36,610 nucleotides of DNA. Origin: Octopus bimaculoides. Its lineage: Eukaryota. Shown here in pieces: positions 4,700 through 29,633 of the stretch. The notes beneath the pieces were generated by a model. It was not told the origin of the DNA and ran no database searches. It saw only the letters and a program-made list of their open reading frames with translations. The stretch is from contig NC_068984.1 in the NCBI RefSeq assembly GCF_001194135.2, positions 3,178,778 to 3,215,387 of the forward strand, read 5' to 3'. The first letter of the stretch is position 1; the number at the start of each line of letters is the position of its first letter. Both the position numbers and the translations under genes were made by a program.

Positions 4700-4717
4700 T
4701 GTGTATGTGTGTGTGTA

Positions 4718-4751
<34 letters not shown>

Positions 4752-4902
4752 CATACATGCAAATATAGCGTATAAGCATACATATATATGTATACACACA
4801 CACACATATATATATATGTGTGTGTGTGTGTGTGTATATATACATATATATGTATGCTTATATATATGTATACATATGTATATATATATATGTGTGTGTG
4901 TA

Positions 4903-4936
<34 letters not shown>

Positions 4937-5062
4937 CATACATGCAAATATAGCGTATAAGCATACATATATATGTATACACACACACACATATATATAT
5001 ATGTGTGTGTGTGTGTGTATACATATATATGTATGCTTATATATATGTACACATATATATAC

Positions 5063-5075
<13 letters not shown>
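4700..5075. repeat. Tandem duplication (~185-bp unit x2) of a compound (TG)/(TA)/(CA) microsatellite
   Basis: The unique core gcatacatgcaaatatagcgtataagcata occurs at 4751 and 4936. Confidence 0.85.
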
Positions 5076-5148
<73 letters not shown>

Positions 5149-5845
5149 ATGTTTATACGTGTATGTAGGAGTCTCCATTTCTCTCGTTCTCTCGTTGTAC
5201 TTACGTATCATAACCTCCCTCCACATACACACCTTCACACCCACTCGCACATACACACCTGCACACACATATGCATACACATACGTGCATATGTGTATAA
5301 TATGTATATCCATGTATATGTGTGTGTGTGCTTGTATTTGAACGTGTTTGTTTGTCTGTAGAAAAGAGAGGCGGGAAAGAGTTGGGGGTGATTGATTCTC
5401 CAAGAGTGAGAGATGGAAGAAATATTTCAAGGATGAATTATAGAAAGGAATGAAATCGTTGATGGTGGGTTGTGGGGGGGGGGTGCAATAAGAAGTGGGA
5501 ATGGAACCATTTTTGCAAAAGATTGAAGGAAGAAGAGTAAGAAGAGGAATAAAAGCGAAGGGAGAAAGTTGGAGAGAACGGGATTAAAAACAACTGAAGA
5601 GAAATTGTCAAGTGAAGACATGCGATGAAACTTGATGCAATGGCGGTGGGAAAATATGGCGGCGTGGAAGTGAAATAGTGAGAGAGATTGATAAAAAGTT
5701 TCACGTGTTTCTTTTGACCAGATACAAAAACATTGAAGAAATATGTGTCACTTGAATTGACACCACTGTATTACAGGTATTTGCTTTACGGAACTTCCTA
5801 AAAGAAAATGGCGAATAAGAAATTTGATATTTTAATCGGAAATAA

Positions 5846-6030
5846 GGCGGCAAACGCGCAGAATGGTGAGCATGCTGGGTGAAACGCTTAGCGGTATTTC
5901 GTCTACCGCTACGTTCTCAGATCAAATTCTGCCGAGGTCGACTTTGCCTTTCATCCTTTCGGGGTCGATAAAATAAGTATCAGTGAAACACTGAGGTCGA
6001 TGTAATCCCCCAAAATTGTGCCTAGAGTAA
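5846..6030 (+). mobile_element. tRNA-derived SINE, octopus-type, degenerate
   Basis: ggcgg...gcagaatggtgagca head; ...aaattctgccgaggtcgactttgcctttcatcctttcggggtcgataaaataagta body recalled as an abundant octopus SINE. Confidence 0.75.
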
Positions 6031-6623
6031 AAAAGATATTTTAGTGCCAAGTTCCGCCAATAATTTTAGCATAACGTTTTATTCCATCACCATTATGGTC
6101 GTCGTTGTTGTTGTAATTGTTGCTGTAGTAGGAATGGTGATGTTCAAGCATTTCTTATTGGTGCTAGCAACGAACAGGAAGGAATTCGACTGATGCCACT
6201 AGGAATCGAAACTTTTTCGTGGAGCTGGCTAATCAAAAGCCAGCTAACCAGTTTGAACTTAAATATAACAATCACTTAAGGGAGAGTCAGCTTACTAGAA
6301 ATAACAGTTATGTTCCCGATAAAGAACCCACTGCTGTCTAAAAGGGGAATATATGTACAGTAATGTATTCCTAAATATACTGTCTTTCCCCTTACCCCCC
6401 CCCAAAAAAAAAACAATGGTGGTGACCAAAGATCTTAAGTTTTCTCGTTTGAGTTAAACCAGGGTTAAACAAAAGAGCACAAAATAATCATTTCTAACAT
6501 CAGCATCACAAGAAATGATATTCCGTGAGAAGGCAATGGTTATTTATTTGACCCAAGTATTGTTCTGGTACTTACGCTGTCTGTCTCAATACGATGAAAG
6601 AGAAAACATACGTCATCAAGAAT

Positions 6624-6709
6624 TGAAAAGGAATAATACTACTGCTATTTAGCCCTAGGAAGCGGTGCTACTTCCTAGTGCTAAATAGCAGTAGTATTAT
6701 TCCCTTTCA
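6624..6709. repeat. 86-nt hairpin (39-bp arms, 2 mismatches, 8-nt loop)
   Basis: tgaaaaggaataatactactgctatttagccctaggaag / cggtgcta / cttcctagtgctaaatagcagtagtattattccctttca. Confidence 0.9.
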
Positions 6710-6972
6710 TGGGACTGTCACATTAAGTTGACAGCATCCCACCACTTTATCGTGTTTCTACTGTATAAATCTGTCTGAGCGATTTAGAAATGTATTATTC
6801 CTAATTCCGATTTATAAAAAACGAACAATTTTAAGGACGGATAAATGACTGATGTCAGAAATTGAAAACATATTTCCATTTATAATGTTACATCAACAAC
6901 GACATCAGCAATAACAACAACAATAACGATTCTGTTGTTGGAAAAATAAAATACCATTATCTACTCGAGACA

Positions 6973-7228
6973 GTGAAAGCGTGTAGCTAAGTGGTTAGGG
7001 TGTTCGACTCATGATTGTAAGATTACGGTTTCAATTCCTGGACCGGGCGTTGCGTTGTATTCTTGAGCAAAGCACTTCATTTCACGTTGCATCAGTTCAC
7101 TCAGCTCGCAAAAAGGACTAACTCTGCGACAGACTGGCATCCTATCCAGGTGGAGAATATATATATACGCCGCTGAAACCGGGAAACCGGCCCTCCTGAG
7201 CCTGGCATGGCTCAAGAAGGAAACATTT
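6973..7228 (+). mobile_element. tRNA-derived SINE (family shared with 27578-27783)
   Basis: A box TAGCTAAGTGG (6984-6994), B-box-like GGTTTCAATTCC, gcgttg...ttgagcaa core; alignable by eye to 27578-27783 and the head of 12022-12320. Confidence 0.8.
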
Positions 7229-7311
7229 ATTTATTTTTACCTACTCTAGACTCGAATTGACACTTGTATCACTGACTTACCATTGTAATCAGCAAACACA
7301 CCACCTACACA

Positions 7312-7346
<35 letters not shown>

Positions 7347-7639
7347 TGAGGAGGGTATTGGATTTAACCAAACCCCGGAGGATACAGGTAATACCGAGCA
7401 AGTGCTGTATACCGATTAGTTTGCCCCAATCGTTGTATATATANNNNNNNNNNNNNNNNNNNNNNNNNNNNNNNNNNNNNNNNNNNNNNNNNNNNNNNNN
7501 NNNNNNNNNNNNNNNNNNNNNNNNNNNNNNNNNNNNNNNNNNNNNNNNNNNNNNTATATATATATATATATATATATGCATATATACATACATGTACATG
7601 CTTACATATATAAATATATATATATATATGTATATAGAC

Positions 7640-7880
7640 ATGCATATATGGGCACAGGACGTCAAAAAGCGTAAACAAATAGAAAAACGAAACAGGCAAC
7701 ATAAAGAACAACCCTTCATCAGTTGTCCCCTGTTTTTATCTTCTCCGCATTTCGAGCGTTAGGTCAAGATGCGTCTTCGTCAAAACAGTCGCTCCCGAAA
7801 AGCAAATTAAATAAAATTTGGGATTTGCGGAGGGTCAAAGTTGGTAACAAAAACAGGACAGTGAAAACACATCTCGCGAA
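7640..7880. mobile_element. Probable interspersed repeat just downstream of the tRNA gene
   Basis: Begins at a (TA)n tract; minus strand carries CTGATGAAGGG and GCTCGAAA, motifs seen in Penelope terminal repeats. Family assignment is from recall only. Confidence 0.35.
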
Positions 7881-7895
7881 TCCAGTCTTAGAAGC

Positions 7896-7900
7896 AAAAA
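7896..7900 (-). terminator. Pol III oligo(dT) terminator of tRNA-Ile
   Basis: TTTTT on the minus strand 4 nt after the discriminator base. Confidence 0.8.
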
Positions 7901-7904
7901 TTAT

Positions 7905-7998
7905 TGCCCCGAGTGAGGGTCGAACTCACAACCTCCGCATATCTATTTAAATGTACTGTCTATAAGTACGGCGCGCTAACCGATTGCGCCACCGGGGC
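7905..7998 (-). tRNA. tRNA-Ile (anticodon UAU) with 20-nt intron (7941-7960)
   Basis: Minus strand GCCCCGG TG GCGC AATCGGTTA GCGC G CCGTA CTTATA [gacagtacatttaaatagat] A TGCGG AGGTT GTGAG TTCGACC CTCAC TCGGGGC A. All four stems pair, intron lies at the canonical 37/38 position, mature length 74 nt. Confidence 0.96.
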
Positions 7999-8019
7999 AA
8001 TACATCAGAGCAGTTGTTC

Positions 8020-8031
8020 AAATATATATTT
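8020..8031 (-). promoter_or_regulatory. Upstream TATA-like element of the tRNA gene
   Basis: AAATATATATTT; the TATATA core lies about -25 to -30 from the tRNA 5' end, where TFIIIB/TBP binds. Confidence 0.45.
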
Positions 8032-8337
8032 CAGTGTAGAATTATTTTATATTTCTGTATTATCAATTGATTTAAGAAACAATCGATTTATCATAAATCA
8101 CGAGAGACGTAGAGACGAGGAGGGAGAGAGAAATGAGAAGGACACAAAGACAAAATGAGAGAGGGAGGCGAGTGAAAGACAGAGAAAGAAGAAGAGAGAG
8201 AGAAAACAAAATAGACGATTATCGTCTGCTACGATTTATGCCAGTGCTTTTATACTCCCATATGAAACAATCTCTTGATTCTAATAACACAGTATTCGGT
8301 ATTCAATTGAAACATCCATGTTAAGTTGGATATAACA

Positions 8338-8710
8338 ATTACCTTTTTGGTACTAATACTGCTTTCGTCGCTAATAATTAACTTTTAATAAGCTCTCTGG
8401 CTATTCGAGACATCAGTGTCTGAAAAGGTGCTGATGTTATATAGATCGAGGCAGAGAGATTTGACAGGTAAACGGTAACCGGATGCCTCCCACTGATGAG
8501 GTCCGGAAGACTGAAATCACGTGAAATGGGAGTTCTGGCACCCATAACTGACACTTCTCGTCTGCTACGATTCATGTCTCTGCTTTAATGGAACGTGCGC
8601 CTGTGGGAGAGGATCTCTCGAGTCTAATAACGCAATATTCGGCCCTTTAACAAATCATCGACATAAAGATTGCCTTCTGGTAGTAATACAGTTTCTGTCG
8701 CTAATAAATA
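8338..8710 (+). mobile_element. Retrozyme/Penelope-like repeat unit (~330 bp) carrying the hammerhead
   Basis: Direct repeats 8348-8380 and 8678-8710 (27/33 identical, period 330) flank the hammerhead. Confidence 0.5.
8487..8532 (+). ncRNA. Minimal type I hammerhead ribozyme motif (two non-canonical positions)
   Basis: CTCCCA / CTGATGA / GGTC-cggaa-GACT / GAAA / TCACGTGA / AA / TGGGAG: 6-bp stem I, exact CUGAUGA and GAAA cores, stem II, palindromic stem III. U16.1 is A and C11.1 is U. Confidence 0.8.
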
Positions 8711-8749
8711 GCAGTTTTCATTGTCTTCTACAATTCTGTAACATGAAAG

Positions 8750-8880
8750 GTCAGCTTTGATCGATCAAACCGAGGAACAAAGGCGTTCCAACTGTGACCA
8801 CTCTCCTGTCTTTTTCTTCTAAGTTTACAATATCCATTATCAAGATGATAAGTGTGGCTATTTTTGGTTATTTAGTTGTT
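8750..8880 (-). mobile_element. Fragment of the same repeat family, inverted
   Basis: Reverse complement ...ggtcacagttggaacgcctttgttcctcggtttgatcgatcaaagctga parallels 13850-13900. Confidence 0.45.
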
Positions 8881-9625
8881 ATGTATAGCAGCCCGGGTGA
8901 CTACATAGGCGCTTTATCGCTGACTCGACAACATCACTGTTGCTGAGCCAGCAATTATATGATCAAAAATACTCTAGCCATCTTTTCTTTTTGACATTAT
9001 GTATCGTGGAGTCCATTATTGCTGTCTCAACCCGACAATATGTCTTACATCTCGGTTCAGATATCAGCTCATATTGCAACCAGGTCGTCACCTCCACAGC
9101 AGAATATAAGTAATTTCAATCACAATTTATACTCCCTGCCCTTTTTTAACCAGAATTCAACCATTTAGAGTTTGACATTTTTTTTATTAAGATTTCTTGG
9201 TTTACTTCATGAGTAGTAACTTTACTCTTAAGTATTCATGCAGTAGTCGGCCCTGAGTGGTCCCTTTTGTTATATTTCCAGTCTGACCTCATAAATGACC
9301 TTTGTTGACTTAAAATGATATTTATGGACTTTGGATGAGAAACACTGAACAGCTTAGCCCAAGACCCGAATAGCAAGAATTCTGCCCATAGTTCTCATTC
9401 TCAACTCAAACCATTTCTCTGCAATTTCGCTGGTGCCTCAAACCCTTTTGTTCTCTCCTACGTCGGCGTCATTGGTACATCATTCATGCAACGTGGAAAA
9501 TATACCACTGCAACTATTACCCAAGAAATGTTCGCATCAAGTCTGCTGCACGCTTCTCACGGCTGGTCGGAGTATAAAGGAAAACTAAATAAAAAAATTA
9601 AAAAAAGTAGACCAACGCGCAAACT

Positions 9626-9750
9626 CAAAGAGACCGAGAGGATAAGTACTAGGCTTACAAAGAATAAGTCTTGGGGTCGATTTGATCGACCAAAGCCGGT
9701 GCTCCAGCATGACCGCAGTCAAATGACTGAAACAAGTAAAAAGAAAAAGA
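9626..9750 (+). mobile_element. 3' fragment of the same SINE family as 27156-27530
   Basis: aagagaccga...ataagtactaggcttacaaagaataagtcttggggtcga...gctccagcatgaccgcagtcaaatgactgaaacaagtaaaaaga; tail parallels 27430-27530. Confidence 0.8.
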
Positions 9751-10090
9751 ATGTATGTTTTCTTTGAGTTTTATTTAAGCTCTTCTTGAGAGAGTTCAAG
9801 CCGGTCGCTAACAAAGAGACAAGACTTTTTGAGTTTATGTTTATGAATAAGCGGTTGAGTTGGTGTGTTAGTTGAGTGGCCGATGCACGCACCCAAGTAC
9901 ATGTATCTAAAGAATCTCGGGTGGAGAATCTTTCGAATATCTTACAAATCTTCACTGTGCCACTGATTGATTGGATTTTGAGAGTCCTCTGCTGTTTCTT
10001 TTGTTCTTTTTCCGTGAAACTGTGTATATTTATATATGTATGTATATATATATATTTATATATATATATATGTGTGTGTTTGTGTGTGTA

Positions 10091-10124
<34 letters not shown>

Positions 10125-10539
10125 TGTGTGTGCATTCAGTTAGATAAGTTTCGACCTGTATTGGCTCAGGCCATGTCTAATTTAATAGCACTGCCTGGAA
10201 AAGTTAATGATGTTTCATATTACAGTCCTTGTTTGGGCACCCTAGACCATTCGAGTTACTGTTTGCAGCGATATATCCCGGCGCGGGTGGTCTTTATCTG
10301 GAATTTGTTGGAGGCTTTCATCCAGGACACTGTCGTTTTCTTCTGTTATGTATATTGGCACGATATTAAAGACTGCTGGGCCAGTTGAAGTTAGATAGTT
10401 GTGTATTAATGATGTGATGTGACGCCAGCATGATTTTTGTAGGGGACGGATAGTACTGGGATTAAGCTACGGATGAATTTTAAAGTTGACGCCTACACAC
10501 ACACACGCACGCACACACACACATCAACGAATGTTTAAA

Positions 10540-10815
10540 GGGTTCACTTGGCACCCATGGTCCCGTGTTTGACCGCATTGTCTTATTGCTAGTCCCCAGG
10601 GCCAATCTTTGTGAGTTAGACGGAGTAGCTGGAAACTGTACGGAAACCCGTCAGGTAGATTCTCCCTGAAATTTCATGGCCCAGCCATATGATCCACTAT
10701 TTAAAAATTACGTTAAAAGGTCACTTGTCTGTGGGATACTCAGCCACCTTCATGCTAATTATTCAATAAGTCGAATTGATGGAACAACTAAATGCGTCGT
10801 CGGCATCGACGAAGA
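10540..10815 (+). mobile_element. Highly degenerate SINE remnant
   Basis: attacgttaaaaggtcacttgtctgtgggatactcagccacctt...aattgatggaacaact resembles 12225-12300; upstream cttgtgag...gacgg...gaaac resembles the 27156 SINE body. Confidence 0.5.
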
Positions 10816-10985
10816 TCCATTTCAATTGTTTAAAGCTCTTATTAAAGAAGATCTGTGTGAGAGGGCCCGGTTTGTGATTTACAATGAAAAACGAATTAAA
10901 AAAATACCGCCAACAACAAAAATACAAAAAGACACAATAACAAAGCAACTGGGATGGGGGATTGTGGGATTGAATGGGTGGAGGA

Positions 10986-11056
10986 GGGGCGGGGGTAGGG
11001 CTAAATGAATGGAGGTTCGGAGGTTAGGCGAGAACTTGTTTCGTTCACGTGACTCA
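10986..11056 (+). promoter_or_regulatory. Candidate promoter cluster: GC box, E-box and overlapping AP-1 site
   Basis: GGGGCGGGG (10986-10994), TCACGTGA (11045-11052) and TGACTCA (11050-11056), followed by CpG-richer sequence ending in CAG|GTATGT at 11466/11467. Confidence 0.35.
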
Positions 11057-12021
11057 GAGCTGTTTAATTGATAAAAGTAGTAGCAACAAGTGAGGTTGTC
11101 ATTTGTTGAGGACGGCGTCGTCGGTGTAGCATGTCGCTTCAGCATTGGCAACAACAACAACAACAGCGAGAACAACCATGAAGTGAATGCTTCTACTGTC
11201 GGGAACTTGTTATTTACTTCAGCAAAAACAAGAAAATAACAACGACGACTACAACAAAAGGTGTCTCTCGTTGAAAATGCGTGACCCCTTCGCGTCCCCT
11301 ATCATTGTATGCCTGCAAGAGTGGGGAACACTAGACGGATCGAACTACAGCCAACAAAGTCAATGGAATTTATTCATAGGGAGTTCAGAGTTCGGCTGAG
11401 AACCCTGCAGGAATAAATGACCCTTCAAAACCCCTTAAATCCGCAGCTCTGCTATATCTTCCTCAGGTATGTCATTGTTATGATATATTTTACGATTAGT
11501 CTTTGATACTTTAGGCACGCGCACCTCTGTCGTAACTTCATCGAATAAAGAAACTGCACTTTGTTACATAAAATAATGTTCTTTCTGTCCCCTCAACACA
11601 CACACACACACACATGCATAAATGTATACACACACATGCATAAACGCGTACACCCATATACACGCGTACACACGCACACACATGTATAAACGCATACAAC
11701 CATATACACGCGTACGCACACACACACGCAGAAGCGAGTGTGAGTGTTGTGTATTCGACTGAGTGGTGCTTCTGATTATGTAATACAGCCAGCATCTATG
11801 AAAATACATGACCATCTCTCCTCACTTATGCGTGTGTTTGTTTGTTTGTTTGTTTGTGTGTGTGTGCGCGTGTTAGGTTCAGCCGCGACTGTATCTAAAG
11901 TTTCGTGCCAGTCTCCTTCGATTTTGTTTCTTCATAACTTCTGAAAAACGTATATTCTTCAAGGGTTTGAGGACATACCATTTTCGAGGATGTCTTTTAT
12001 GATTATGCTTATGATTGCTTT

Positions 12022-20597: not shown

Positions 20598-22550
20598 ATG
20601 AAGCTCCGTCAGCTAATGGTCAGCTCCTTGCCCCGAATGAGGGCCAGGAAGAAAAAACAACCGTCTTTTCAAGTACTGAACAATGAAGCCCAACAGTACG
20701 ACCGCAACTGCAATAGTTTTAGTCCAGAAATGTCCCCTGATATGAATGCAAAAGGTGACATTGATATTGTGAAAAATGTCTGCTTCCGAAGTGGAATCGA
20801 AAACAGCGGCAGTGTTAGTAGTGGCACCAGTAATGGGAACCATACCAGTTCAACAACCACCACCACAACAACAGCATCAATAACGTCAACAAATAATGTA
20901 GGCAATGGCAGTACAAACAAGACTGAGAACAATTGCCATGCTATAGACTGCATCGATGTTGTGAACTTTAATGTGAACATCAAAGGAGCGCCTGGTGACA
21001 ACAAATGCGTTTGTTGCGACAAACACATTTCACAGATTATGGCGTCATCTTCGTCATCATCATCACAAGATGCTGAAAGTACAGATAACGATGAGAATAG
21101 CAGCACCAGTGGCTGTAGCTCGGCTTCTAGCGACAAGCAGAACATTCCGAAGACACGATCTCGCATCCGGACCAATCCTTGGTTACCTTCACCAAGACCG
21201 ACACCATCCACTTCACCAACTTACTCGTCTTCCTCATCCTCACTTACCTCTCATTCGCCCCTAGTGTCGCCACATATTACTAAGGGCCGATATTCACATC
21301 CGGCCGCCAACGCTGATTTCCGGCGACTCCAAGAAAATAAAGGATGTCGAGTACGCTCTGACCGCAGCTGGACACGAAAGTTCGTACTGACCAACTTAAA
21401 CGCCGCAATTGGCAACGGCCGTCCACGTGGTTATTACTTGTCGGACAGTGATGAACAATCACCAATCGGAGACAAGAATGGGTCGATTACAGAAGAAGAA
21501 GACGACGGATACTTTGACCATCGAATCAGTTTCGAATATGAAGAAACACTGGAGAATTTGCTGGAAGGAGACCTCCAACAGCTGCGGAACGAGAGTTACC
21601 TTTCCATACAAGACTTATTAACCGACGACTCGCGTCGCGATAAACGGAGGAGCACTTGCTCAGAATTCAGTTGTTGCCATGACGACAGCTGTGATGAAAG
21701 CGTTGCAGCCGACGCCATTAGCAACGACCTGGAAGGTTCATTAGTTTCATCAACTCTCAGCTCTGAGTTGACTGATATACGGGAAACAGACACTGGCTAT
21801 TCAAGTTTAGCCTTCGACAGTCCCTCATCTGATTTAGACAAGGCTTTTGAAAATATTTCAGAACAAGGAGACATTAATGCTACAGTACAAACTGGGCGAA
21901 GAAGCAGAGATTTATCCGATGACAACAACAAAACGGAAGACGAGGAATCCGAGATTCGGTCTGAATTAGCCGAAGAGAGCGAGCTTATGGATCTTTTCCG
22001 TGACGATTTAACTGATGACGAAGTGGTTGCAACTTTGGACGAATCGACAATAAAGGTTCTTCAATCTACCGATTGCTGCTCTGATGACGATGAGCTGTTG
22101 GCATTGGAAGAATCGGAAAAAGTATCCAGTCTTGTCGGCAAAAACCAATACGTAAAGCCTACTGGAAATGAGAAAGACAGTATAGCTAAAGTTGTGGTCG
22201 ACGACGATGGATGTGTCACCGGTGCTGTGCCGCGTCGATCTCTCAACGAGATAAGATGCAGTCTTGAAGAGAAAGTCAACAAACTTCGCCAAGAGAAACA
22301 ACTTGTGGAGCAAAAAATTCGTGAGGCGAAAGAAGCCGAAAAGATCCGAGTGCAAGAGAAAAGGAAATTACAAAAACACGTGATCATGCACCGGAAACAG
22401 ATGCTTCTACAGACACTAACCAATCTAAAGGAGAGGTTAGAAAACCAAAGCACTCGTCTGCAAACAAGCTACAGCGCCGTTCTTTCGATGCAGCAAAGAT
22501 TTGCACAACGCCAATCTCCATTGCTGCTGATATCAGCGAGTAGCTCTTGA
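20598..22550 (+). CDS. Uncharacterised 650-aa protein: Ser/Thr/acidic low-complexity body, C-terminal coiled coil (~residues 550-635); whole CDS in one exon
   Basis: 1953-bp stop-free frame in AT-rich DNA, non-microsatellite composition. ATG has A at -3; in-frame stops upstream (TAA 20556, TAG 20571). C-terminus SLNEIRCSLEEKVNKLRQEKQLVEQKIREAKE...LQTLTNLKERLENQSTRLQ has heptad-like character. Family not recognised. Confidence 0.9.
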   Translation: MKLRQLMVSSLPRMRARKKKQPSFQVLNNEAQQYDRNCNSFSPEMSPDMNAKGDIDIVKNVCFRSGIENSGSVSSGTSNGNHTSSTTTTTTTASITSTNNVGNGSTNKTENNCHAIDCIDVVNFNVNIKGAPGDNKCVCCDKHISQIMASSSSSSSQDAESTDNDENSSTSGCSSASSDKQNIPKTRSRIRTNPWLPSPRPTPSTSPTYSSSSSSLTSHSPLVSPHITKGRYSHPAANADFRRLQENKGCRVRSDRSWTRKFVLTNLNAAIGNGRPRGYYLSDSDEQSPIGDKNGSITEEEDDGYFDHRISFEYEETLENLLEGDLQQLRNESYLSIQDLLTDDSRRDKRRSTCSEFSCCHDDSCDESVAADAISNDLEGSLVSSTLSSELTDIRETDTGYSSLAFDSPSSDLDKAFENISEQGDINATVQTGRRSRDLSDDNNKTEDEESEIRSELAEESELMDLFRDDLTDDEVVATLDESTIKVLQSTDCCSDDDELLALEESEKVSSLVGKNQYVKPTGNEKDSIAKVVVDDDGCVTGAVPRRSLNEIRCSLEEKVNKLRQEKQLVEQKIREAKEAEKIRVQEKRKLQKHVIMHRKQMLLQTLTNLKERLENQSTRLQTSYSAVLSMQQRFAQRQSPLLLISASSS

Positions 22551-23659: not shown

Positions 23660-24018
23660 ATTATCCTGATTATTATTATTGTTCAGTAGTTTTATTCTTA
23701 TAACGTGCTTTCACTTCACTACCGAGCGCAGCTCTGTGCGCCTTGGGTATGTGCTGTGGTTTGCTGTGGTGCTCTTCTGTTTACTGTATTGAAAGTGTTT
23801 TGCGTAGAATGTGTGCAGTACCCAGTAGTGCAATTTTCTGTATGTTATATATATTTGTAAGTCCTGGTGTTTTTGTTATGTATTTGTCTGAATATTTTTT
23901 TATTATACCTAAGGCACCTACTATGATAGGAATTGTTTCTGTTTTTAAATTCCACATTCGAGTTATCTCTATTTCCAAGTCTTTGTATTTTGAAAGTTTT
24001 TCCATTTCTTTTAGAGAA
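23660..24018 (-). mobile_element. 3' end of a Dong/R4-like non-LTR retrotransposon (REL-endonuclease C-terminus, 3'UTR, (TAA)n tail); continues into the gap
   Basis: KEMEKLSKYKDLEIEITRMWNLKTETIPIIVGALG...IQKIALLGTAHILRKTL* is typical of the restriction-like endonuclease end of R2/R4-group elements; (TAA)n tail near 23668-23680. Confidence 0.85.
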
Positions 24019-27577: not shown

Positions 27578-27783
27578 GGTGTAAGCGCGTGGCTTAGTGG
27601 TTAGGGTGTTGACCTCATGTTCGTAAGCTTGTGATTTCGATTCCTGAGCTAGGCGACGCGTTGTGTTTTTGAGCAAGACTCTTCATTTTAAGTTGTTCCA
27701 GTCTACTCAGCTGGCGAAAATGAGTAACCCTACGATTGACTGGCGTCCTATTCAGGGGTGTGGAATATATACGCCATTGAGAA
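27578..27783 (+). mobile_element. tRNA-derived SINE
   Basis: Perfect A box TGGCTTAGTGG (27590-27600), ttcgattcc B box, gactggcgtcctatt...gaatatatacgcc tail shared with the 6973 copy. Confidence 0.8.
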
Positions 27784-29451: not shown

Positions 29452-29515
29452 AAGATACAAGGCTCCATCTTTGGGATGTATGTATGTATGTATATATGTA
29501 CGTATTCATGCATGC

Positions 29516-29569
<54 letters not shown>

Positions 29570-29633
29570 GCGTGCATGAATACGTACATATATACATACG
29601 TACGTACATCCCAAAGATGGAGCCCTGTATCTT
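29452..29633. repeat. 182-bp near-perfect palindrome centred on (TA)24
   Basis: Base i pairs with 59085-i; only 4 non-Watson-Crick positions (29460/29625, 29481/29604, 29485/29600, 29513/29572). Confidence 0.92.

What the first reader, a model, noticed from the sequence alone, without database searches (positions are those of the whole stretch)
8481..8543. Near-canonical minimal type I hammerhead ribozyme with palindromic stem III
Seen: CTCCCA(8487-92) pairs with TGGGAG(8527-32); exact CUGAUGA (8493-99) and GAAA (8513-16) cores; stem II GGUC/GACU closing a CGGAA loop; stem III is the self-complementary UCACGUGA. Stem I can extend past a 5-nt bulge (GGAUGC 8481-86 with GCACCC 8538-43, one mismatch). 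Established: minimal type I hammerheads with short palindromic helix III occur in Penelope-like elements and metazoan retrozymes, and can cleave as dimers. Inference: this is a genomic copy of such a family in a cephalopod. A8525 sits where U16.1 is required and U8512 replaces C11.1, so this copy may be inactive while sister copies are active.
Basis: partly seen in the sequence, partly recalled or inferred. Interest (0 to 1): 0.85.

Follow-up and report, generated by a model that had tools for sequence, protein, structure and literature searches.

The report
Decayed hammerhead ribozyme in octopus repeat
A 63-base stretch of octopus DNA really does have the shape of a self-cutting hammerhead RNA and sits in a short duplicated repeat of the kind that carries such ribozymes in other animals, but it has two damaging changes in its core and is most likely an ordinary, inactive relic.

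Summary
At 8479-8543 (+) there is a type I hammerhead layout: exact CUGAUGA and GAAA boxes, a 6-bp helix I, a 4-bp helix II and an 8-nt palindrome as helix III. A strict descriptor found nothing comparable in 1500 shuffled windows.

The window is Octopus bimaculoides (GCA_001194135.2, CM046604.1). The motif closes the first unit of a roughly 336-bp direct repeat present as about 1.7 copies (8207-8542 and 8543-8782, 71% identical). The repeat is 40% GC and non-coding, folds unusually well (z about -3.4 to -3.9), and starts right after a GA-rich tract. That matches metazoan non-LTR retrozymes, which are thought to be non-autonomous derivatives of Penelope-like elements.

The copy has A instead of U at 16.1 (8525) and U instead of C at 11.1 (8512). 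It scores 17.6 bits against Rfam's best hammerhead model (threshold 52). It is the only hammerhead at the locus, and there is no RT or GIY-YIG endonuclease within 2.4 kb.

Sister copies could not be reached: no held collection contains octopus DNA. Family membership, consensus, covariation and activity are therefore untested.

Verdict: a real hammerhead-derived sequence, probably a dead copy. It is a new member of a known kind, of low to moderate interest.

The parts
8207..8542 (+). Repeat unit 1 (336 bp), complete, ending with the hammerhead motif
   Evidence: Aligns to 8543-8782 (local alignment 8207-8458 vs 8543-8782, 71% identity over 228 aligned nt; nhmmer E = 3.4e-15; BLAST E = 9.5e-7; repeat families D2, D4, D5 spaced 330-343 nt). 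GC 39%. Linear fold -93.1 kcal/mol, z = -3.87, 0 of 100 shuffles as stable. Circular fold z = -3.4, 0 of 200 shuffles.
8543..8782 (+). Repeat unit 2, truncated (about 240 of 336 bp), with no hammerhead part
   Evidence: The stretch 8783-8900 shows no significant similarity to the hammerhead end of unit 1: alignment score 16 against a shuffle mean of 23.
8479..8543 (+). Type I hammerhead-like motif as a whole. The outer closing stem is either 8479-8482/8535-8538 or 8481-8486/8538-8543.
8487..8492 (+). Helix I, 5' strand (CUCCCA); pairs with 8527-8532
   Evidence: Six Watson-Crick pairs.
8493..8499 (+). Core box C3-A9 (CUGAUGA)
   Evidence: Exact.
8500..8512 (+). Helix II (GGUC/GACU) with loop 2 (CGGAA). 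The basal pair G10.1-U11.1 is a wobble where G-C is the conserved pair.
   Evidence: G10.1-C11.1 is described as highly conserved in PMC4209133.
8513..8516 (+). Core G12 A13 A14 and A15.1 (GAAA)
   Evidence: Exact.
8517..8524 (+). Helix III, the palindrome UCACGUGA. It forms either a 2-bp stem with an ACGU tetraloop in a monomer or an 8-bp intermolecular helix in a dimer.
   Evidence: The cofold shows the intermolecular 8-bp helix. Palindromic helix III is a documented hallmark (PMC4209133).
8525..8526 (+). A16.1, which should be U to pair with A15.1, and A17, the predicted cleavage-site nucleotide. Cleavage would fall 3' of 8526.
   Evidence: cmscan marks the 15.1-16.1 pair as non-standard. 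Mutants at 15.1/16.1 lose at least 10-fold activity (PMC3088659).
8527..8532 (+). Helix I, 3' strand (UGGGAG)
   Evidence: In the fold of the whole unit, UGGGAGU 8527-8533 pairs instead with a second ACUCCCA at 8254-8260.
8100..8206 (.). GA-rich microsatellite-like tract directly upstream of the element's 5' end; a possible insertion target
   Evidence: Penelope-like elements show an insertion bias for microsatellites (PMC8557442). The link to this tract is inference only.

Best explanation
This is a fossil copy of a non-coding, hammerhead-bearing retroelement of the retrozyme / Penelope-like-element kind in the Octopus bimaculoides genome.

How active members of such families work (established for other animals, inferred here):
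1. Tandem units are transcribed.
2. The type I hammerhead cuts each unit, leaving a 5'-OH and a 2',3'-cyclic phosphate.
3. A host RNA ligase closes the monomer into a highly self-paired circular RNA.
4. A reverse transcriptase borrowed from Penelope-like elements copies the circle round and round, so new insertions are longer than one unit.

The locus fits that product. It holds 1.7 head-to-tail units of about 336 bp starting next to a microsatellite-like tract, with the hammerhead at the end of unit 1.

This copy itself is most likely inert, for three reasons:
- Position 16.1 is A, which breaks the A15.1-U16.1 pair and the NUH cleavage triplet.
- Position 11.1 is U, so the basal pair of helix II is a G-U wobble instead of the conserved G-C.
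- The second unit has lost its hammerhead, so no unit-length RNA could be excised from this locus.

Shown: the motif, its non-random nature, the repeat architecture, the absence of coding capacity, the strong predicted RNA structure and the host species. Inferred: descent from a mobile family, the mechanism of spread and the loss of activity.
For: - All motif elements are present at the stated coordinates.
- The strict descriptor gives 0 hits in 1500 shuffles against 1 in the real window.
- cmscan aligns the full length of a type I hammerhead model (positions 1-77 of 77) over 8474-8549.
- The repeat is about 336 bp and present as 1.7 copies. This lies within the 150-450 bp range of metazoan retrozyme units (PMC7229834).
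- GC is 39-40%; the published range is below 45-50% (PMC7229834).
- Unit RNA folds with z = -3.9 as a linear molecule and z = -3.4 as a circle. Ten neighbouring control windows gave z from -2.96 to +2.77. Retrozyme circles are described as highly self-paired (PMC7229834, PMC7761336).
- No Pfam family, and in particular no RT or GIY-YIG domain, was found in six-frame translations of 2.4 kb on each side.
- Reverse transcription of circular templates is expected to give insertions longer than one unit (PMC7761336).
- Type I hammerheads are already recorded in molluscs (about 5000 in a mussel, PMC7229834) and in a cephalopod (235 Rfam Hammerhead_1 hits in the giant squid, PMC6962438).
- For inactivity: the 15.1-16.1 pair is normally essential, and variants lose at least 10-fold activity (PMC3088659). 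The NUH/NHH rules are summarised in PMC3884650.
Against: - No second copy of the unit or of the hammerhead was found anywhere: not in the window, not in the metagenome or viral contig scans, and not among ORF-based protein searches of two reading frames across the motif. These collections hold essentially no octopus DNA, so this is absence of a test rather than a negative result.
- The Rfam score is far below threshold.
- The two units are only 71% identical, whereas the hammerhead shows only two presumed changes in about 39 constrained positions. By my own Poisson estimate, two or fewer changes has a probability of about 0.06 if decay were uniform. The divergence may therefore predate insertion, or the motif may have been under some constraint.
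- No clear target-site duplication was found.
- The hammerhead fold is not the predicted minimum-energy fold.
Confidence: 0.65

Rival explanations
1. The motif is still a working self-cleaving ribozyme at this locus. It would act as a monomer using the 2-bp helix III with its ACGU tetraloop, or as an intermolecular dimer through the 8-bp palindrome, and it would tolerate A at 16.1 and a G-U pair at 10.1-11.1.
For: - Eleven of thirteen core positions are canonical, and all three helices are intact.
- The motif is better preserved than the 71% identity of the surrounding repeat would suggest (my estimate p about 0.06).
- Natural hammerheads with core deviations, such as U15.1-A16.1, retain low activity (PMC3088659).
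- The cleavage-site rule has been relaxed from NUH to NHH (PMC3884650).
- Tertiary-stabilised hammerheads tolerate more core variation than minimal ones (PMC3884650).
Against: - Here 15.1 and 16.1 are A and A, an unpaired purine-purine opposition rather than a swapped pair.
- Two core deviations are combined in one copy.
- There is no partner hammerhead in cis.
- The hammerhead fold is about 10 kcal/mol less stable than the alternative fold.
- The Rfam score is 17.6 bits against a threshold of 52.
- Nothing similar was found in the 10 kb upstream of the Argonauta hians orthologue of the neighbouring gene. That flank may not reach the equivalent position.
Confidence: 0.1
2. The repeat is a leftover pseudo-LTR pair, a partial tandem, of an autonomous Penelope-like element whose RT/endonuclease ORF has been deleted or lies elsewhere. 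On this reading it is not a dedicated non-autonomous retrozyme.
For: - Penelope-like elements carry hammerheads in their pseudo-LTRs and insert as partial tandems, often at microsatellites (PMC4209133, PMC8557442).
- The element abuts a GA-rich tract.
- Penelope elements are reported in cephalopod genomes (PMC6962438).
Against: - No RT or GIY-YIG signal within 2.4 kb on either side.
- No ORF of 90 aa or more that is free of simple repeats lies nearby.
- The motif is of the canonical type (4-bp helix II, helix III present). It is not the min-HHR type typical of metazoan Penelope-like elements, which has a 6-bp helix II, an extra base after A9 and no helix III (PMC4209133).
Confidence: 0.15
3. 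The motif is a chance resemblance: a hammerhead-like string that arose by accident inside an unrelated local duplication.
For: - Rfam gives no significant hit.
- There is only one copy in 36.6 kb.
- If the first-stage scan covered a whole genome, about one chance match to the bare descriptor is expected per 2.7 Gb (my calculation).
- A weak descriptor hit also occurs inside a coding ORF at 22075-22139.
Against: - The strict descriptor gives 0 hits in 1500 shuffles.
- The perfect 8-nt palindrome placed exactly where helix III belongs adds about a 5e-3 factor.
- An outer closing stem with an internal loop is present, as in canonical type I motifs.
- The motif sits at the unit boundary of a 336-bp tandem with strong RNA structure.
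Confidence: 0.07

Closest known systems
Metazoan non-LTR retrozymes (Cervera & de la Pena 2020, PMC7229834; review PMC7761336), e.g. the roughly 350-390-bp mussel units and the 330/350-bp axolotl units
   Same: - Type I hammerhead with a 6-bp helix I, a 4-bp helix II and a short palindromic helix III.
- Unit of about 336 bp in head-to-tail arrangement.
- Low GC (40%), no coding capacity, no LTR.
- Strongly self-paired predicted RNA.
- Mollusc host.
   Different: - Only 1.7 units and a single hammerhead.
- The core is mutated at 16.1 and 11.1.
- Loop 1 and loop 2 do not show the archetypal tertiary-contact nucleotides, which is also true of the mussel motifs.
- Copy number, expression and circular RNA are unknown.
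[quoted passage not shown] 2017 as cited in PMC7761336)
   Same: - Type I topology.
- Palindromic positions at helix III that allow dimer formation.
- Partial-tandem insertion architecture.
- Association with microsatellite targets.
   Different: - Those motifs lack helix III or loop 3, have a roughly 6-bp helix II with an extra nucleotide between A9 and 10.1, and flank an RT + GIY-YIG ORF.
- Here helix II is 4 bp with no extra base, helix III is present, and no RT or endonuclease is nearby.
Rfam Hammerhead_HH9 (RF02275) / Hammerhead_1 (RF00163), clan CL00010; Schistosoma Sm-alpha and newt satellite 2 hammerheads
   Same: - Full-length alignment to the HH9 model (positions 1-77) with the same order of closing stem, internal loop, helix I, core, helix II, core and short helix III.
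- A satellite-like repeat of about 330 bp, as in newt and Schistosoma.
   Different: - 17.6 bits against a gathering score of 52.
- Non-standard pairs at 15.1-16.1 and in the outer stem.
- HH9 is a single-copy motif conserved in amniotes, which is not shown here.

Membership tests
Hammerhead ribozyme, type I | Core C3 U4 G5 A6 N7 G8 A9 (CUGANGA) | tested here: met
   CUGAUGA at 8493-8499.
Hammerhead ribozyme, type I | Core G12 A13 A14 | tested here: met
   GAA at 8513-8515, followed by A15.1 at 8516.
Hammerhead ribozyme, type I | A15.1-U16.1 base pair (the U of the NUH cleavage triplet) | tested here: not met
   Position 16.1 is A8525, so A faces A. cmscan flags the pair as non-standard. No alternative register restores a U (own inspection).
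Hammerhead ribozyme, type I | H17 (not G) at the cleavage site | tested here: met
   A8526.
Hammerhead ribozyme, type I | Conserved G10.1-C11.1 pair at the base of helix II | tested here: not met
   G8500-U8512 is a wobble pair.
Hammerhead ribozyme, type I | Three helices around the core, with helix I open (type I topology) | tested here: met
   Helix I has 6 bp, helix II 4 bp, helix III 2 bp plus a tetraloop (or 8 bp in a dimer). Both ends lie in helix I.
Hammerhead ribozyme, type I | Score at or above Rfam's gathering threshold for a hammerhead model | tested here: not met
   No hit at gathering score. The best hit is HH9 at 17.6 bits against 52.
Hammerhead ribozyme, type I | Covariation in helices among related sequences | not testable with these tools
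   No related sequence could be retrieved.
Hammerhead ribozyme, type I | Site-specific self-cleavage | not testable with these tools
   Requires an in vitro transcription assay.
Metazoan non-LTR retrozyme | Short tandem repeats (150-450 bp units), each carrying a type I hammerhead | tested here: inconclusive
   The unit is about 336 bp and tandem, but there are only 1.7 copies and only unit 1 keeps the hammerhead.
Metazoan non-LTR retrozyme | Low GC (below about 45-50%), no LTR/PBS/PPT, no coding capacity | tested here: met
   GC is 39.8%. No Pfam family in the flanks. Only short ORFs.
Metazoan non-LTR retrozyme | Unit RNA predicted to be highly self-paired | tested here: met
   z = -3.87 as a linear molecule and -3.4 as a circle, with 61% of bases paired. 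This is more extreme than 10 control windows.
Metazoan non-LTR retrozyme | Many dispersed or tandem copies in the same genome | not testable with these tools
   No searchable copy of the octopus genome was available. There is only one locus in the 36.6-kb window.
Metazoan non-LTR retrozyme | Expression as unit-length linear and circular RNA | not testable with these tools
   Requires RNA-seq, RNase R treatment or northern data.
Penelope-like element (pseudo-LTR with min-HHR) | Repeats flank an ORF encoding RT and a GIY-YIG endonuclease | tested here: not met
   No Pfam hit with E of 1 or less for RT or GIY-YIG in six frames of 5807-8206 and 8783-11182.
Penelope-like element (pseudo-LTR with min-HHR) | Minimal hammerhead: no helix III or loop 3, helix II of about 6 bp, an extra nucleotide between A9 and 10.1 | tested here: not met
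   Helix II is 4 bp and directly follows A9. Helix III is present (criteria from PMC4209133).

The most novel reading that the evidence does not exclude
The copy is not dead. On this reading, octopus carries a natural hammerhead that cleaves after an A-A-A triplet (A15.1 opposite A16.1). It might do so only as a palindrome-mediated dimer, or only after A-to-I editing, which is pervasive in cephalopod RNA. That would make it a conditionally active, editing- or concentration-gated ribozyme. A milder version of the idea is that this is the first glimpse of an active octopus retrozyme family that makes circular RNAs.
Probability: 0.04. Interest if true: 0.6.

Novelty: new member of a known kind. 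Interest (0 to 1): 0.25.

Why it matters
If sister copies exist, this would add octopods to the list of animals that carry hammerhead-bearing retrozymes or Penelope-derived repeats. It would also point to a possible source of ribozyme-made circular RNAs in a lineage known for unusual RNA biology.

That would extend a well-documented pattern: molluscs, cnidarians and amphibians are known carriers, and 235 Rfam hammerhead hits are reported in the giant squid. It would not be a new principle.

This single locus matters little on its own. It looks like a mutated, solitary relic in intergenic DNA.

Tried and rejected
1. Rfam at gathering score on the whole window: only a tRNA. The whole-window E-value mode returned only microsatellite-driven 'miRNA' noise.

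2. Sister copies through called ORFs:
- An exact look-up of the 65-aa minus-strand ORF across the motif found nothing on record.
- A word-indexed protein search with the 68-aa minus frame gave 0 hits.
- An exhaustive HMMER search of 1.84 billion representatives with the 38-aa plus frame gave one hit, P0011. It is a 65-aa-unit repetitive protein matching at 21-23 bits per repeat, so I rejected it as spurious.

3. DNA pattern scans:
- The exact 24-mer of core plus helix II gave 0 hits in metagenome contigs.
- CTGATGAG-N(9-17)-GAAATCACGTGA gave 10 metagenome loci. None has hammerhead pairing, so they are chance matches.
- The same pattern gave 0 hits in viral contigs.

4. Orthologous loci through the neighbouring 650-aa gene. 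Argonauta hians (L002) and an ENA cephalopod-like contig (L003) show no hammerhead and no similarity to the element. The 10-kb flanks probably stop short of the equivalent position.

5. Harvesting more octopus DNA through a LINE-tail protein family. The O. bimaculoides entries have no contigs on record, so I abandoned this.

6. A second, degenerate hammerhead in unit 2: not supported.

7. Alternative registers that would put a U at 16.1: all break helix I or place G at position 17 (own inspection).

8. CpG deamination as the cause of C11.1 to U. The site would be a CpG, but CpG observed/expected is about 1.0 in the element and 0.85 in the flanks, so there is no particular support.

9. Inverted repeats and target-site duplications around the element: nothing convincing.

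Full report
**What is there.** The 63 bases at 8481-8543 read GGATGC CTCCCA CTGATGA GGTC CGGAA GACT GAAA TCACGTGA AA TGGGAG TTCTG GCACCC (unique in the window). In standard hammerhead numbering:
- CUCCCA/UGGGAG is a 6-bp helix I.
- CUGAUGA is C3-A9.
- GGUC/GACU is a 4-bp helix II closing loop CGGAA.
- GAAA is G12-A15.1.
- UCACGUGA is a perfectly palindromic helix III.
- A8525 is position 16.1 and A8526 is position 17.

The outer part of helix I can close in two ways. The other is cmscan's version (CCGG 8479-8482 with CUGG 8535-8538, leaving an AUGC/UU internal loop). The two have similar energies, -12.4 and -12.0 kcal/mol for the whole hammerhead fold.

**Is it more than chance?** Yes, by descriptor statistics.
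- A relaxed type I descriptor hits 0.07 times per dinucleotide-shuffled window.
- A strict descriptor hits 0 times in 1500 shuffles and once in the real window.
- My own composition-based estimate is about 2e-5 per window, or about one per octopus-sized genome. The 8-nt palindrome at the helix III position is worth another factor of about 5e-3.

By covariance model the answer is no. Rfam reports no hammerhead at gathering score. In E-value mode on 421 nt the best hit is Hammerhead_HH9 at 17.6 bits (threshold 52, E = 0.12), although it aligns across the whole model. In a whole-window E-value search this hit is buried under microsatellite-driven noise.

The isolated 76-mer also prefers a different fold (-22.4 kcal/mol), in which the CUGAU box pairs with the palindrome. 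I read the discrepancy as follows: two core mutations plus family-specific stems and loops cost the models most of their score, while the architecture itself is too specific to be accidental.

**Where it is.** The 650-aa ORF at 20598-22550 is encoded by exactly one public contig, CM046604.1 of GCA_001194135.2. The fetched locus is base-for-base identical to the window. That this assembly is Octopus bimaculoides is my own knowledge, supported by O. bimaculoides UniRef entries at 91% identity for another ORF in the window.

The motif is the 3' end of the first unit of a direct repeat.
- 8207-8458 aligns with 8543-8782 at 71% identity over 228 aligned positions, with indels. Other measures: BLAST E = 9.5e-7, nhmmer E = 3.4e-15, and three repeat families spaced 330-343 nt.
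- The period is about 336 bp and the locus holds about 1.7 units. Unit 2 stops before its hammerhead part, and what follows shows no similarity to it.
- The element begins immediately after a GA-rich tract at 8100-8206.
- It is 40% GC.
- Six-frame translations of 2.4 kb on each side hit no Pfam family, so no reverse transcriptase or GIY-YIG endonuclease is nearby.
- The 336-nt unit is predicted to be unusually structured. The linear fold is -93.1 kcal/mol with z = -3.87. As a circle opened at the predicted cleavage site, z = -3.4, with 0 of 200 shuffles as stable. Ten neighbouring control windows ranged from -2.96 to +2.77.
- In that fold the 3' strand of helix I (UGGGAGU 8527-8533) pairs with a second ACUCCCA at 8254-8260. 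This would sequester the ribozyme in the unit-length RNA.

**What it most likely is.** These features match the published description of metazoan non-LTR retrozymes:
- type I hammerheads with a 6-bp helix I, a 4-bp helix II and a short palindromic helix III;
- units of 150-450 bp in head-to-tail copies, with low GC, no LTR and no coding capacity;
- expression as highly self-paired circular RNAs (PMC4209133, PMC7229834, PMC7761336).

Reverse transcription of a circular template is expected to give insertions longer than one unit (PMC7761336), which fits 1.7 units. [quoted passage not shown] Hammerheads are already known in a mussel (about 5000 copies, PMC7229834). Rfam Hammerhead_1 hits (235) are reported for the giant squid (PMC6962438). 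A full-text search found no report for Octopus.

**Is this copy active?** Probably not.
- A at 16.1 removes the A15.1-U16.1 pair and violates the NUH triplet. Mutants at 15.1/16.1 lose at least 10-fold activity, and even the swapped U-A pair found in nature cleaves poorly (PMC3088659; rules reviewed in PMC3884650).
- U at 11.1 turns the conserved G10.1-C11.1 pair (PMC4209133) into a wobble.
- No alternative register gives a U at 16.1 without destroying helix I.
- There is no second hammerhead in cis.

It is not required. With U restored at 16.1 the monomer would have a 3-bp helix III with an ACGU tetraloop, which is the invertebrate type that cleaves well as a monomer (PMC7761336). For the same reason 'minimal' is a misnomer: the min-HHRs of Penelope-like elements lack helix III and have a longer helix II with an extra base (PMC4209133).

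**What could not be done.** The decisive tests are sister copies, a consensus at 8512 and 8525, and covariation. All need the octopus genome, which none of the searchable collections contains.
- I tried exact and homology look-ups of ORFs spanning the motif. The single hit, P0011, is a spurious repetitive protein.
- I ran two metagenome pattern scans and one viral scan. Results were zero hits or chance matches without pairing.
- I fetched loci around the nearest conserved gene's relatives, in Argonauta hians and in an ENA contig that is probably from a cephalopod. They show no hammerhead and no similarity, but the 10-kb flanks probably stop short.
- I tried to harvest octopus DNA through a LINE protein family, but the octopus entries carry no contigs.

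The absence of relatives is therefore an untested point, not a negative finding.

**One unexplained point.** The two units differ at 29% of aligned sites, yet the hammerhead shows only two presumed changes in about 39 constrained positions. By my rough Poisson estimate, that or fewer has a probability of about 0.06 under uniform decay. This is not significant. It leaves room for divergence that predates insertion or for some past constraint.

**Verdict.** This is a genuine hammerhead-derived motif in a retrozyme-like partial tandem of Octopus bimaculoides. It is most likely a catalytically impaired relic. It is a new member (new host) of a well-known kind, and its interest is low to moderate.

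Noticed in passing
window 7905-7998 (-): An intron-bearing tRNA gene (52.9 bits). The anticodon loop CUUAUA followed by a 21-nt insert indicates tRNA-Ile(UAU). ARAGORN could not name it. It lies 209 bp upstream of the hammerhead element and is divergently oriented.
   Followed up: partly
window 20598-22550 (+): A 650-aa single-exon, serine-rich ORF with a weak PF15546 (DUF4653) hit. The orthologue in Argonauta hians is 79% identical and carries the implausible name 'serine-rich adhesin for platelets'. A 98%-identical protein comes from Logan contigs of at most 2.7 kb.
   Followed up: partly
window 23781-24010 (-): The C-terminal tail of a LINE-like ORF2 (...IPIIVGALG...ALLGTAHILRK...), broken by an assembly gap. 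It has 285 homologues in many animals, the best being O. bimaculoides UniRef A0A0L8I0U5 at 91%.
   Followed up: partly
window 22075-22139 (+): A second, weak hit of the relaxed hammerhead descriptor inside the 650-aa coding ORF. It has CTGATGA, a 4-bp helix II around a 20-nt loop, and 5 of 6 helix I pairs. This is at the level expected by chance.
   Followed up: yes
window 6973-7163 and 27579-27771: An interspersed repeat, 76% identical over 193 nt. This is the only non-microsatellite dispersed repeat pair of at least 60 nt in the window. Its family was not identified.
   Followed up: no
window 4704-5070: A 185-bp unit repeated twice (94% matches) within TG/TA microsatellite sequence. The window as a whole is rich in di- and tetranucleotide repeats and has 11 assembly gaps.
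   Followed up: no
window, many sites (e.g. 29472-29613, 4959-5038): Dozens of sub-threshold Rfam 'miRNA' matches (mir-5014, mir-3149, mir-297 and others) fall on TA/TG microsatellites on both strands. They are artefacts of low-complexity hairpins.
   Followed up: yes
window 8408-8438 (+): A strong hairpin inside unit 1 (ACAUCAGUGUC...GGUGCUGAUGU). Its 3' arm contains a second CUGAUG string. No hammerhead can be drawn around it on either strand.
   Followed up: partly
L012 346-376 (+) (metagenome contig Ga0247575_1005224): A tandem unit of about 42 nt containing CTGATGAG...GAAATCACGTGA. It lacks hammerhead helix pairing and is probably a coding or simple repeat.
   Followed up: no
L003 4348-4465 (-): A 5S rRNA gene (38.6 bits, just above threshold) on an ENA 'metagenome' contig. 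The contig is probably cephalopod DNA, because it encodes a 64%-identical relative of the 650-aa protein.
   Followed up: no
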